A DNA stretch of 64,000 bases, from the NCBI RefSeq assembly GCF_030684315.1, contig NC_081398.1, positions 6,552,385 to 6,616,384 of the forward strand. The letters run 5' to 3'. A program made the position numbers and the translations under genes. The DNA is from Stegostoma tigrinum. Its lineage: Eukaryota. This document shows positions 17,080 through 39,484 of the stretch, in pieces; within the stretch, counting starts at the first letter, position 1; the number at the start of each line of letters is the position of its first letter. The notes beneath the pieces were generated by a model. That model was not told the origin of the DNA and searched no databases. It saw nothing but the letters and a program-made list of their open reading frames with translations.

Positions 17080-17091
17080 ATGAGGACGCCG
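17080..17091 (+). CDS. Candidate first coding micro-segment (MRTP) of the GPI-IgV gene
   Basis: ATG AGG ACG CCG|GTGAGT; phase 0 joins exon 18105 in frame (VLLIRK-MAVQR...). Confidence 0.5.
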
Positions 17092-17427
17092 GTGAGTGAT
17101 TGATCTCTCTCTCTCTATTCCGCAACGCTGCAGTCTCATTAATATCAACATCGTTACTTTGCAATCCCAGAGCCTGCCAGGAATCTGTCCACTGTTTCGG
17201 CAGAAATGTAGACGCTCGGTCTGATTTGCCCCAACTCTCCCCGGCTGTCCGCCTCTCCAGCGTCAGGGCTCGGAGGCAGAAAGACAGCAGATGCTGGAAG
17301 CCGGGTCAATAAATGAGGAGCTGGAGAAGTGCAGCGGGTCACAGAATCAGTCTCATCCACTGAGCTTCTCCAGCTTCACATGTGTTGCCCCTGTCAGCCC
17401 CCTCTTTAAAGCTGAAAGGAAATCTCT

Positions 17428-17925
17428 TTCTACGCTGTCCCCATCATACACTCCCAAGACAGGGACAGCACGGGGTTAGATACAGAGTAAAGCCCCCCTC
17501 TACACTGTTCCCCCAAACATACACTCCCAGGGCAGGGACAACATTGGGTTAAATACAGAGCAAAGCTCCCTATACACTGTCCCCCATCAAACACTCCCAG
17601 GGACAGAGACAACACGGGGTTAGATACAGAGCAAAGCTCCCTCTACACTGTCCCCCATCAAACACTTCGAGGACAGGGGCAGCACAGGGTTAGATACAGA
17701 GTAAAGCTCCCTCTACACTGTCCCCCATCAAACACTCCCAGGACAGGGGCAGCACAGGGTTAGATACAGAGTAAAGCTCCCTATACACTGTCCCCCATCA
17801 AACACTCCCCAGGACAGGGGCAGCACAGGGGTTAGACACAGAGTAAAGCTCCCTATACACTGTCCCCCATCAAACACACCCAGGACAGGGGCAGCACAGG
17901 GGTTTAGATGTAGCGTAAAGCTCCT
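17428..17925. repeat. ~70-bp tandem satellite, about 7 copies
   Basis: ctctacactgtcccccatcaaacactcccaggacaggggcagcacagggttagatacagagtaaagctcc repeats at 17641, 17711, 17781 and onward. Confidence 0.92.
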
Positions 17926-18122
17926 TTGAAACAGTGCCAGCCCCCAGGTTGGTAACACACGGGGACATACACCACAGCACACTGCCCCCCCCCCCCCCAA
18001 ATTCTGAGCAACCTTGAGTTTGTCTGTGCAGGTGCTTTTCCTACCTGCTCCCGATCATGTCGAATGCAATGCATTGACCTCTCAATGCTGTCTGTCTCCA
18101 CCAGGTTCTACTCATCAGGAAA

Positions 18123-18186
18123 ATGGCTGTGCAGAGGATTTCGCTTCTCCTACTGCTGATGACAGTCACTCTGAGCTGGGCAAAAG
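18123..18186 (+). CDS. Signal-peptide exon of the GPI-anchored IgV protein (exon 18105-18186)
   Basis: Acceptor tgtctgtctccaccag (ends 18104); MAVQRISLLLLLMTVTLSWAK+G has n/h/c regions with an S-W-A cleavage motif. Phase-1 GC donor AAG|GCAAGT is compatible with the phase-1 IgV exon. Confidence 0.75.
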
Positions 18187-18212
18187 GCAAGTGTTTAATT
18201 CAGGGACAGTGA

Positions 18213-18703
18213 GACCTGCAGATGCTGGAGAATCCAAGATAATAAAATGTGAGGCTGGATGAACACAGCAGGCCAAGCAGCATCTCAGGAGCACAAAAGC
18301 TGACGTTTCGGGCCTAGACCCTTCATCAGAGAGGGGGATGGGGAGAGGGTTCTGGAATAAATAGGGAGAGAGGGGGAGGTGGACCGAAGATGGAGAGAAA
18401 AGAAGATAGGTGGAGAGGAGAGTATAGGTGGGGAGGTAGGGAGGGGATAGGTCAGTCCAGGGAAGACGGACAGGTCAAGGAGGTGGGATGAGGTTAGTAG
18501 GTAGGAGATGGAGGTGCAGCTTGGGGTGGAAGGAGGGGATGGGTGAGAGGAAGAACAGGTTAGGGAGGCAGAGACAGGTTGGACTGGTTTTGGGATGCAG
18601 TGGGTGGAGGGGAAGAGCTGGGCTGGTTGTGTGGTGCAGTGGGGGGAGGGGACGAACTGGGCTGGTTTTGGGATGCGTTGGGGGAAGGGGAGATTTTGAA
18701 GCT
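18213..18703 (-). mobile_element. Young Penelope (Neptune) 3' fragment with hammerhead motif (18302-18329)
   Basis: Near-identical reverse complement of about 10300-10790. Confidence 0.9.
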
Positions 18704-19063
18704 GGTGCTCTGCTCAGTGAAAGCCAGCCTGAAGACATGCTCAAACATCCACTTCTGTTCCTTGTACCATAAGTTTGGAAGGAGTAAAAGGTGGAAGAGG
18801 TTATTGAGCTGGATCCCCGTTCTGTAAGGTCATGGCTGATCACAATTGTGCGTCAATTTCACTCTGCTGATGAACCATATTATTTCTGACTCTCTTAAAA
18901 TCCAACTGATTCAGTGTCTGAGCTTCCACTCCTCAGTGCTACATCTAACGGGCATGCTATTGAGGTATGGTAACCACAGCGAGACAGCTTAGTGCACTCC
19001 AAGCATTCATATTTCTCCTACATTTCCCTGCCAGTAAAAAGGTTCTTGCATATCCTAAAGATA

Positions 19064-37236: not shown

Positions 37237-37605
37237 ACCCACTGAGCTGCCTTCCAAACAGTAGAGAGATGACCGTGCAAGTCGGAGAGTCGGTGGAGAT
37301 GCCATGCACGTTTAACTGGACAGGGTCGATGCCCGAGTCCCGACGGGCGCTGTGGCAGAAGAAGTCCGAGCACGGCAGCTCGTTGGTGGTCCATGTGCGC
37401 GACATGGGCACGGAGAATGTGAACCAGAACGAACAGTTCTCTGGCCGCACCTCCCTGCCGTCTAATTGGTTCGAGAAGAAAGACCTGTCGCTCACCCTGG
37501 CCCGGGTGTCGATGAGTGATGCCGGGGATTATGAATGCCACGTTGTCACCCAGCGGCCCCACGCTTCCAATGTCTGCATGGACATCAAGCTGACCGTCAC
37601 CTCAG
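37237..37605 (+). CDS. Immunoglobulin V-set exon, B7/butyrophilin-like
   Basis: Acceptor tttgtttctgccccag and donor CAG|GTGAGG give a 369-nt symmetric phase 1-1 exon. It encodes VQVGESVEMPC (B strand), LWQKK (C), FSGRTSL (D), DLSLTL (E), DAGDYEC (F) and IKLTVT (G). There is an N-W-T sequon and coding-like CpG-rich composition. Confidence 0.92.
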
Positions 37606-37704
37606 GTGAGGAATTCCCCTGGCCATTCGACTACGAGAGGCATTGCCCAGTTCCGTCCTGTCTGCTTGAAGGAGAGAGTCCCCCTTGAGCTGGGATGGGA
37701 AGTG

Positions 37705-38765
37705 GGGAAGTACTGAGGAATGGCAAATGGAATTGAATTCGGATAAATGGGAGATGTTGCATTTTAGTAAGATACACCAATGCAGGACTTACACAGTTAG
37801 TGGGAGGGCCCTGGGGAGTGCTGTCAAACACAGAAACCTTGGTTTGCAGATACATAGTTCCTTGAAAGTGGCATCAGAAGTGGGCAGGGAGGTGGAGAAA
37901 GCATTTGCCTGCATTGCTCAGAGCCTTGAGGGCAGGACTAGGGGAAGCAATGGCCTAGTGCTATTATCACTGGGCTGTTAATCCAGCAAGTTCTGGGAAC
38001 GTAGGTTTGAATCCTGCCACAGCAGATGGTGGAATTTGAATTCAATAAAATATCTGGAATTAAGAATCCAACCATGACCATAAGTCCGTTGTCAATTGTC
38101 AGGGGAAAACCCATCTGGTTCACTAATGCCCTTTAGGGAAGGAAACTGCCATCCTTACCTGGTCTGGCCGACATGTGACTCCAGTCCTCCAGCAATGTGG
38201 TTGACTCTTAACAGCCCTCTGGGCAATAAATGCTGTAAGCCAGTCATGCCCTCATTCTGTTCATGAATTTTTTTTAAAAAGTTGGGATGTCGTATTATGC
38301 TGTACAAGACTTTGGAGAGGCCACATTTGGAGTAACTGTGTACAACTCTGGTCACCCTGCTTTCGGATATGATTGAATTACAAAGGATTTAGAAGGATGT
38401 TACTGGGACTGGAGGGTTTGAGTTATAAGGAGATGCTGGATAGGCTGGGACATTTTCACTGGCACGCCAGAGGTTGAGAAGTGACCTTATAGAGGTTTAT
38501 AAAATCATGACGGCCATGGGTATTGTGAATAACCAAGATCTTTCCCTCCCCCTCTGCCCCGCCACCCTAGGGTAGGCTACTCTAAAATTGTAGGGAATAG
38601 GGTACGAGGGGAAAGGGACTTGAGGGGCAACTTTTTCACACAGAGGGTGGTATGCGAATGGAATGAGCTGCGGGGGAAGTGGTGGAGGTGAGTGCAATTC
38701 CAACATTTAAAAGGTATCTGAATGGGTATATGAATGGGACGAGTTTCGAGGGGTATGTGCCAAAT
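37705..38765 (+). mobile_element. CR1 fragment with a nested tRNA-head/L2-tail SINE (~37938-38275)
   Basis: WQMELNSDKWEMLHF..LGLQIHSSLKVA, interrupted by a ggcctagtg..ggtttgaatcc SINE. Confidence 0.7.
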
Positions 38766-38767
38766 GC

Positions 38768-39175
38768 TTTCTCTCCCTCCCCTCTCTCTTATTCCCCCAC
38801 TCCTCCCCTTCTATTTTCCTCCCACACACCCTCCTCGCCTCTTGCTCCCACATCCTCTTTTTCTCACTCTTCCTTTCTCTCTTTCCTCTTCCTTCCCCCT
38901 TCTTCCCTCTCTTTCATTCCCCATCTTCCTTTTTCCTTTCTGTTCTTCTCTCATCCCTCTTTCTCTCTTCCACACTCCTTCCCTCTCTCTTATTTCCCCC
39001 CTCCTGCAATTCTCTCTCTTCTTTTCGCTCTTTCTTTCTTTCCTCTTTCTCTCTTGCCGCATCTCTCTTCCACTCTCCCTCCTCTTCTCTCGTTCCTCTC
39101 CCCTCATTTTCCCTCTCTTTCTTTCTCTCTTTCCCCTATCTCTCTCCCCGCCCCTTCGTCCTTCCTTTCTTGTGA
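38768..39175. repeat. CT-rich low-complexity tract
   Basis: Pyrimidine simple sequence. Confidence 0.9.
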
Positions 39176-39410
39176 CCTAAACATCTCAGCTCCCTTGTCC
39201 ACCTTCACCCCATCCCCACTTTGGGGCTGAGTTGATGATGAGGAGAGACACTGCATTGGAGATGGCTTAGCAGGAGCGTAAGAAGTTGTGAATGATGCTG
39301 TTTGAAGGGTGGGATTACTGGGAAGGGGAAGGGGGTGCAGCTTGAAGGGTGAGACCTGAAACTAATGAATCCTTTGGGTTTTTTTCGGGGCGGGGTGTGG
39401 TTTTTCACAG

Positions 39411-39484
39411 ATGCTACAGAAGCCACAACTCTACCCTGCATTTTTCTGCTGTTGGGATTGGCCTTTTTCCCTCTGTTCAGTTGA
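39411..39484 (+). CDS. C-terminal GPI-anchor signal exon of the IgV gene (exon 39411-39504)
   Basis: Acceptor gtttttcacag; phase-1 read DATEATTLPCIFLLLGLAFFPLFS* gives a small-residue omega region (S|D-A), a polar spacer and a 15-aa hydrophobic end with no cytoplasmic tail. Donor CAG|GTCAGT lies 20 nt after the stop. Confidence 0.75.

What the first reader, a model, noticed from the sequence alone, without database searches (positions are those of the whole stretch)
17080..39484. Hidden gene: GPI-anchored, single-IgV B7/butyrophilin-like protein
Seen in sequence: three phase-compatible coding exons separated by repeat-filled introns join into one ORF, 18123-18186 + 37237-37605 + 39411-39484 (507 nt, 168 aa; 178 aa if the 17080 ATG is used). 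It reads as a signal peptide, one IgV domain (W-Q-K, FSGRTSL, DAGDYEC), then S-D-A, a spacer and a hydrophobic C-terminus with no cytoplasmic tail. The 1.8 kb between the IgV and final coding exon holds only CR1/SINE/CT repeats, so no IgC exon is present there. Established: B7/butyrophilin members are typically IgV-IgC type I transmembrane proteins, while a single IgV with a GPI anchor is the Thy-1/CD160 architecture. Inference: a lineage-specific, non-signalling (ligand or decoy) co-stimulatory-like molecule of cartilaginous fish. The ORF track does not show this product.
Basis: partly seen in the sequence, partly recalled or inferred. Interest (0 to 1): 0.85.

Follow-up and report, generated by a model that had tools for sequence, protein, structure and literature searches.

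The report
Shark single-IgV B7-like GPI-type gene
The window holds a real, intact shark gene for a small surface protein made of one B7-like immunoglobulin V domain and a lipid-anchor-type tail; six other sharks and rays have the same gene, automatic pipelines already predict it there, and nobody has studied it.

Summary
Exons 18123-18186, 37237-37605 and 39411-39484 join in phase 1 into a 168-aa ORF. It is 178 aa from the 17080 ATG, through the junction 17091/18105. Intron 1 uses a GC donor. The N gap (33908-34553) lies inside intron 1.

Exon 2 is a V-set domain (Pfam 54.5 bits). A family profile matches CD276, MOG and VTCN1 best.

RefSeq models from Rhincodon, Cetorhinus, Heptranchias, Hemitrygon, Hypanus and Mobula have the same plan: leader, one IgV, then a tail of exactly 24 residues starting at a conserved Asp. 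No other Ig exon was found in the 64 kb.

The tail fits a GPI-attachment signal by rule. This is inferred, not shown.

I add a likely non-coding last exon (41140 to about 41470, AATAAA at 41448). It is reached from a donor at 39504/39505. Skipping exon 3 would give a soluble form.

Verdict: real gene, architecture supported, function unknown. It is a new variant of a known kind, of moderate interest. Other first-stage notes report similar single-IgV B7-like genes elsewhere in this genome.

The parts
17062..17091 (+). 3' end of a 5' non-coding exon (its start is unknown). It holds the weak in-frame ATG at 17080, and the donor gtgagt follows at 17092.
   Evidence: The whale-shark model P0003 reads through the homologous exon: the same six residues GVYTSM, then nine residues before the conserved Met.
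18105..18186 (+). Exon 1: 18 nt of leader sequence, the ATG at 18123 (A at -3, G at +4), and 21 codons plus 1 nt of signal peptide. GC donor AAG|GCAAGT.
   Evidence: The leaders of six orthologues match 18123-18185 best in the window, 67-86% identity.
33908..34553 (.). Assembly gap inside intron 1. It was not filled and is not needed for the coding sequence.
   Evidence: Orthologue models join the leader directly to the IgV.
37237..37605 (+). Exon 2: one complete V-set Ig domain, phase 1 on both sides. It has the canonical Cys-Trp-Cys core, a second conserved Cys pair (A strand and G strand) and one N-glycosylation sequon (NWT).
   Evidence: Pfam V-set 1.5e-14. AF2 model with mean pLDDT 93. 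87% identical to Rhincodon XP_048476177. Conserved columns.
39411..39484 (+). Exon 3 coding part: completes the conserved Asp codon, then 23 residues (short polar spacer plus a 15-17-residue hydrophobic end) and the TGA. This is a GPI-attachment-type signal.
   Evidence: Orthologue tails match here best. The tail is 24 residues in all seven species.
39485..39504 (+). Probable untranslated end of exon 3, up to a donor CAG|GTCAGT at 39504/39505.
   Evidence: Inference only.
41140..41470 (+). Candidate last exon (3' UTR). Acceptor ttttcag|AT, with the first AATAAA after the stop at 41448. If exon 3 were skipped, it would read in phase 1 as a 24-residue hydrophilic end, giving a soluble form.
   Evidence: An older whale-shark Augustus model (P0001, EukProt) ends in the homologous sequence. 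The 3' limit is a guess.

Best explanation
This is an intact, conserved elasmobranch gene. It has at least four exons and probably five, spanning about 17.06-41.5 kb on the + strand. It encodes a 168-residue precursor: a cleavable signal peptide, a single B7/butyrophilin-like IgV domain stapled by a second A-to-G-strand disulfide, and, directly after the G strand, a 24-residue C-terminal GPI-attachment signal. After signal-peptide removal and transamidation at the conserved Asp (or the Ser before it), the product would be a roughly 120-residue glycosylated V domain. It would be held on the outer leaflet by a lipid anchor, with no stalk, no IgC domain and no cytoplasmic part. It can therefore act only through what its V domain binds: as a ligand, a cis-modulator or a decoy. 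Shown: the exons, the ORF, the fold class, the family resemblance and the conservation of the plan. Inferred: the GPI anchoring, the second disulfide, the last non-coding exon and any immune function.
For: The exon coordinates, phases and ORF are. Pfam V-set scores 54.5 bits and the IgV model is confident (pLDDT 93). Orthologues with the same plan come from three shark orders and from rays: P0003, P0160, P0019, P0076, P0159 and P0156. Their leaders and tails map uniquely to exons 1 and 3. In a tree, the window's V domain sits in one clade with them (94/91 support), next to Rhincodon (100/99). Asp-Ala, the tail length, the Gly-Leu core and the terminal Phe-Ser are invariant across the four aligned orthologues (P0019, P0156, P0076, P0003). 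The tail has no charged residue in its last 20-23 positions, and mean hydropathy of the last 15 residues is 2.1-2.5. Amphibian relatives instead have a longer hydrophobic segment followed by basic residues. A profile of the family hits CD276 IgV best (46 bits per domain), then JAML, MOG and VTCN1, followed by MXRA8 and, further down, BTN3A. tblastn with 155 Ig-rich proteins finds only this one Ig exon in the 64 kb. From my own knowledge of GPI signals: small residues at omega and omega+2, a 5-8-residue spacer, then 12-20 hydrophobic residues to the C-terminus. Placental alkaline phosphatase uses Asp-Ala-Ala, the same triplet as five of the six orthologues.
Against: No GPI predictor or signal-peptide predictor was available, so both calls are rule-based. 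In this species omega+2 would be Thr if Asp is omega, which is less favoured; Ser-Asp-Ala is the alternative. The orthologue evidence consists of automatic gene models whose transcript support I could not inspect. An older whale-shark model (P0001) uses a different 3' exon. Structure search gives only generic IgV neighbours such as CAR D1, nectin-1, B7-H4 and PD-L1, so 'B7-like' rests on sequence profiles at about 25-30% identity.
Confidence: 0.65

Rival explanations
1. Same gene and same protein, but the hydrophobic end is kept as a tail-less type I membrane anchor rather than being exchanged for GPI.
For: Human B7-H4, one of the closest V domains, has a very short tail. It was first proposed to be GPI-linked and later argued to be transmembrane (PMC2760136; PMC9104196), so such tails can mislead.
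Against: The segment is only 15-17 hydrophobic residues, contains one or two prolines, has no flanking basic residue, and is preceded by a conserved Asp-Ala-Ala/Thr. That is typical of a GPI signal and poor for a stable helix.
Confidence: 0.12
2. The main product is secreted. Exon 3 is usually skipped, and 37605 joins 41140 to give the IgV plus a 24-residue hydrophilic end.
For: There is a strong acceptor at 41140, compatible with phase 1, and a poly(A) signal at 41448. The whale-shark Augustus model P0001 ends this way.
Against: The reading frame of that exon is not conserved: the window has a stop where the whale shark reads on. Six RefSeq models use the hydrophobic tail, and its sequence and exact length are conserved between sharks and rays, which a rarely used exon would not explain. 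P0001 is an ab initio model that also lacks the leader.
Confidence: 0.08
3. It is the elasmobranch counterpart (orthologue) of Thy-1, not a B7-type molecule.
For: It has the same overall plan as Thy-1 as I recall it: a 5' non-coding exon, a leader exon, one IgV exon and a GPI-signal exon; about 160 residues; and an extra disulfide linking the first and last strands. The ESM Atlas feature search lists Thy-1 clusters at 0.91 (rank 9; a lead only).
Against: The Atlas Thy-1 clusters carry no common Pfam family, whereas this domain scores strongly as V-set. Its profile matches B7/BTN V domains. All higher Atlas hits are VTCN1, BTN or HHLA2 clusters. The cysteine spacing differs from Thy-1 as I recall it. 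No direct alignment could be made, because no Thy-1 sequence was available by reference.
Confidence: 0.05
4. Not a working gene in this species: the exons are mis-joined across the assembly gap, or it is a decaying copy.
For: The 646-N gap lies between exons 1 and 2. Intron 1 is 19 kb, full of retroelements, and uses a non-GT donor. This species has no transcript evidence.
Against: All three coding exons are open, with matching phases and good splice signals. GC donors of the form AAG|GCAAGT are a known minor class. Order, strand and junction residues match the orthologues. The V domain is 87% identical to the whale shark's, with every conserved core residue kept.
Confidence: 0.04

Closest known systems
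B7-H3 (CD276) and B7-H4 (VTCN1) IgV domains; butyrophilin/MOG V domains
   Same: These are the best sequence-profile matches among solved structures. They share the stretch 'F/Y-x-x-R-T ... L-x-L ... D-x-G-x-Y-x-C' and have one phase-1 exon per domain. B7-H4 also has almost no cytoplasmic tail and has been proposed, and disputed, as GPI-linked. Pipelines name the orthologues 'VTCN1-like' or 'CD276-like'.
   Different: There is no IgC domain, no stalk and no transmembrane or cytoplasmic region. There is an extra conserved Cys pair. Identity is only about 20-30%, so it is not an orthologue of any named B7 or BTN. No receptor is known.
Thy-1 (CD90), with CD160 as another single-Ig GPI protein
   Same: The architecture and probable gene plan: leader exon, one V exon, GPI-signal exon, and a very short distance from the domain to the anchor (my own knowledge; Atlas lead).
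   Different: The V domain's sequence family is B7/BTN-like, not Thy-1-like.
Uncharacterized single-IgV relatives in elasmobranchs (long Ser/Asn-rich stalk plus hydrophobic end: P0074, P0148, P0119) and amphibians (TM plus cytoplasmic tail: P0073, P0092, P0100, P0141)
   Same: The same V-domain family with the same four cysteines. In Heptranchias and Cetorhinus a long-stalk paralogue lies on the same scaffold as the orthologue of this gene.
   Different: They form separate clades in the tree and use different membrane attachments. None has the 24-residue tail.

Membership tests
Immunoglobulin V-set domain (Pfam PF07686) | Profile match above the curated cut-off, plus the Cys-Trp-Cys core | tested here: met
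   54.5 bits against a cut-off of 26. The core residues are invariant in alignment A1. The beta-sandwich model has pLDDT 93.
B7 / butyrophilin family | V domain closest in sequence to B7/BTN V domains | tested here: met
   A profile of the family against the PDB puts CD276 first; JAML, MOG and VTCN1 are next, then MXRA8, with BTN3A, PD-L1 and CD86 further down. The single sequence alone gives VTCN1, CD276, PD-L1 and MOG, after multi-domain pIgR.
B7 / butyrophilin family | Ectodomain of IgV followed by IgC | tested here: not met
   There is no second Ig exon anywhere in the window. All seven orthologue sequences go from the IgV straight to the tail. 'Typically V and C domains' is from PMC11599192.
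B7 / butyrophilin family | Type I transmembrane segment with a cytoplasmic tail | tested here: not met
   The protein ends at the hydrophobic segment.
B7 / butyrophilin family | Binds a CD28-family or other lymphocyte receptor | not testable with these tools
   No partner is known, and no complex job was run.
GPI-anchored proteins | N-terminal cleavable signal peptide | tested here: met
   By inspection: a basic residue, a 12-residue hydrophobic core and a small -3/-1 pair (Ser-Trp-Ala). It is conserved in six orthologues. No SignalP was available.
GPI-anchored proteins | C-terminal signal: small omega and omega+2, a short polar spacer, and a hydrophobic run to the very end | tested here: met
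   Rule-based only. Asp-Ala-Ala/Thr, a 5-7-residue spacer and a 15-17-residue hydrophobic end, 24 residues in all species. No NetGPI or big-PI was available.
GPI-anchored proteins | Lipid anchor actually attached (PI-PLC release) | not testable with these tools
   This needs an experiment.
Thy-1 | Sequence relationship to Thy-1 | not tested
   No Thy-1 sequence was available by reference. The Atlas feature score of 0.91 is a lead only.

The most novel reading that the evidence does not exclude
This would be an undescribed, elasmobranch-wide branch of the B7-like V-domain family that has shed the IgC, stalk and tail. It sits on the membrane as a bare GPI-anchored V domain, a Thy-1-like design built from a co-stimulatory-ligand domain. 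It would act as a cis-modulator or decoy for one of the Ig receptors encoded nearby, with a soluble form made by skipping the anchor exon.
Probability: 0.25. Interest if true: 0.6.

Novelty: new variant of a known kind. Interest (0 to 1): 0.45.

Why it matters
B7-family ligands are normally two-domain transmembrane proteins. Their origin, and how their repertoire looked in the oldest jawed vertebrates, are open questions in comparative immunology. A V-only, lipid-anchored relative conserved from sevengill sharks to rays gives a defined candidate to express, to test for GPI anchoring, and to use as a probe for its receptor. It also shows that gene finders can miss or truncate such genes. The exons are small, one intron is 19 kb and has a GC donor, and two older models (P0001, P0002) are fragments. 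It is not a major surprise: the fold is ordinary, pipelines already predict the gene in other species, and nothing is known about its function.

Tried and rejected
(1) RNA junction test. The look-up of sequencing runs found six runs from two studies that hold all words of exon 2, with kind unstated. Local scripts read the whole window, and those places were masked.

(3) The joined 168-aa model was translated in a local script only. It was not sent to any search or fold tool. Searches used exon 2 by reference and the orthologues' own sequences.

(4) Foldseek against the PDB gave only generic IgV neighbours, which did not help tell families apart.

(5) Pfam on ten intronic or flanking ORFs gave only weak GIY-YIG hits.

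(6) Literature searches found no description of a single-IgV GPI-type B7 relative in cartilaginous fish. Two key B7 reviews were not held.

(7) A search for other Ig, TM or IgC exons in the window found none.

(8) No hidden exon in the gap is needed, because the orthologues join leader to IgV directly. The gap was not filled.

(9) No complex-prediction job was run, since no partner is claimed.
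Full report
WHAT IS THERE.

- Exon 1 starts at an ATG in a strong context at 18123 and ends at 18186. The intron begins GCAAGT, a GC donor in the consensus AAG|GCAAGT. The nearest GT donor, 5 nt on, would break the frame.
- Exon 2 (37237-37605, 369 nt) has a clean acceptor and a GTGAGG donor, and is phase 1 on both sides.
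- Exon 3 (39411-39484) follows tcacag and ends in TGA.

Joined in a local script, they give 507 nt and 168 residues without a stop. The 178-residue variant from the ATG at 17080 also reads through, by the junction 17091/18105. That ATG has a poor context. It lies in what the orthologues show to be a 5' exon whose frame is not conserved, so 18123 is the likely start.

THE GAP. The N run 33908-34553 lies inside intron 1, 15.7 kb after exon 1 and 2.7 kb before exon 2. Reading frame across it is therefore not at issue. Whether the scaffold is continuous there cannot be tested with these tools, and I did not try to fill it. Indirect support for the join comes from the orthologues: their models go straight from the leader to the V domain, and their leaders match nowhere else in the window.

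THE DOMAIN. Exon 2 is a complete V-set Ig domain.

- Pfam PF07686 scores 54.5 bits against a cut-off of 26.
- The AlphaFold2 model has mean pLDDT 93.
- Besides the canonical Cys-Trp-Cys core, it has a second cysteine pair, one near the start of strand A and one in strand G. The pair is conserved through the whole family and probably forms a second disulfide (inference).
- There is one sequon, Asn-Trp-Thr.
- Foldseek returns only generic V domains: CAR D1, nectin-1, B7-H4, JAML and PD-L1.
- Sequence is more telling. The single domain finds VTCN1, CD276, PD-L1, VSIG4 and MOG. A profile built from the family puts CD276 first (46 bits per V domain); JAML, MOG and VTCN1 are next, then MXRA8, with BTN3A and CD86 further down.

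'B7/butyrophilin-like' is thus a fair description of the V domain, at about 20-30% identity. It is not an orthologue of any named member.

RELATIVES. The exhaustive representative search gave 1056 hits. The informative ones are short proteins.

- RefSeq models from Rhincodon typus (XP_048476177, 87% identical in the V domain), Cetorhinus maximus, Heptranchias perlo (XP_067828258), Hemitrygon akajei, Hypanus sabinus and Mobula hypostoma all show the same plan. It is a leader, one V domain, then a tail of exactly 24 residues.
- The tail begins with a conserved Asp and ends Phe-Ser.
- The core is 161-168 residues. The longer models merely read an upstream ATG through the 5' exon.
- The window's six-frame translation is matched best by each orthologue's leader at 18123-18185, and by each tail at 39407-39481.
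- A maximum-likelihood tree puts the window's domain next to Rhincodon (100/99), inside a clade of all tail-24 proteins (94/91). This clade is separate from elasmobranch paralogues with a long Ser/Asn-rich stalk, and from amphibian relatives with a transmembrane segment and cytoplasmic tail (midpoint root only).
The closeness to whale shark fits that.

NO IgC EXON. tblastn of 155 Ig-rich proteins against the window finds a single Ig exon. Open frames after AG dinucleotides downstream of 37605 are low-complexity or repeat-derived. Over half of the first 1267 bases of intron 2 recur elsewhere in the window. The part from 38886 to 39145 is CT-rich tandem repeat.

THE TAIL.

- The Asp codon is split by intron 2.
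- After it come Ala-Thr (Ala-Ala in five of the six orthologues, Thr-Ala in Cetorhinus), a five-to-seven-residue polar spacer, and 15-17 hydrophobic residues that end the protein.
- No charged residue occurs in the last 20-23 positions of any orthologue.
- From established knowledge of GPI signals this is a good match, and Asp-Ala-Ala is the site used by placental alkaline phosphatase (my recollection).
- The segment is short, proline-containing and unflanked by basic residues. The amphibian relatives' true membrane anchors are not.
- No GPI predictor was available, so anchoring remains an inference. I rate it at about two in three.
- B7-H4 is a caution: it was proposed to be GPI-linked and later argued to be transmembrane (PMC2760136; PMC9104196).

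AN ADDITION TO THE MODEL.

- Twenty bases after the stop there is a donor, CAG|GTCAGT (39504/39505).
- At 41140 there is a strong acceptor (ttttcag|AT).
- The first AATAAA after the stop is at 41448.
- An interspersed repeat fills 39608-40383.
- The simplest reading is that exon 3 is internal and a last, non-coding exon runs from 41140 to about 41470.
- Skipping exon 3 would keep phase 1 and add a 24-residue hydrophilic end, giving a soluble form. An older whale-shark Augustus model (P0001, EukProt) ends in just this sequence.
- The frame is not conserved between the two species, so I take it as 3' UTR unless RNA shows otherwise.

HOW IT PROBABLY WORKS. The precursor enters the ER. The leader is cut after Ser-Trp-Ala. 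The V domain folds with two disulfides and one N-glycan. The transamidase replaces the last 23-24 residues with GPI. The mature product is a bare V domain lying close to the outer leaflet. It has no means of signalling by itself, so it must act through its binding partner, in trans, in cis or as a decoy. For B7-H4, the V domain alone carries the receptor-binding activity and works as a decoy when soluble (PMC2760136). Everything after 'folds' in this paragraph is inference.

WHAT COULD NOT BE DONE.

- The joined protein model was not submitted to any search or fold tool. Exon 2 was searched by reference, and exons 1 and 3 were compared locally with the orthologues.
- Literature searches found no description of this family.

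VERDICT. GPI anchoring and the ligand or decoy role are reasonable but untested. Pipelines already predict the gene in six other elasmobranchs, and other first-stage notes report single-IgV B7-like genes elsewhere in this genome. I class it as a new variant of a known kind, of moderate interest.

Noticed in passing
window 365-3968 and 4271-4610: A very large minisatellite: 33-bp unit, about 110 copies, 92% matches. It creates a spurious 1011-aa ORF on the minus strand. A second array of 28-bp units lies next to it.
   Followed up: partly
window 17429-17924: Seven tandem copies of a 70-bp unit lie in the intron between the 5' non-coding exon and exon 1.
   Followed up: partly
window 9140-10444 (+), 27843-28343 (+), 19373-20092 (-): Retroelement ORFs. 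The first two have weak GIY-YIG endonuclease matches (E 0.003 and 0.00075, below Pfam's cut-off), suggesting Penelope-like elements. The other two of the three lie in intron 1.
   Followed up: partly
window 18186/18187: Intron 1 uses a GC-AG donor (AAG|GCAAGT). This may be why two older gene models in related sharks lack the leader: P0001 starts at an internal Met, and P0002 is partial and reads into the intron.
   Followed up: partly
window 12500-16400: A long CT/GA-rich low-complexity tract gives many Ser-Leu-rich ORFs on both strands.
   Followed up: no
window 5330-5509: A second assembly gap, outside the gene. It was not examined.
   Followed up: no
outside the window: about 47 kb upstream and 8-11 kb downstream (earlier notes): First-stage notes report another apparently GPI-anchored gene upstream and an Ig-receptor cluster with an Arg-bearing activating member downstream. 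In Heptranchias and Cetorhinus a long-stalk paralogue shares the scaffold with this gene's orthologue, so the upstream gene may be that paralogue. This was not tested.
   Followed up: no
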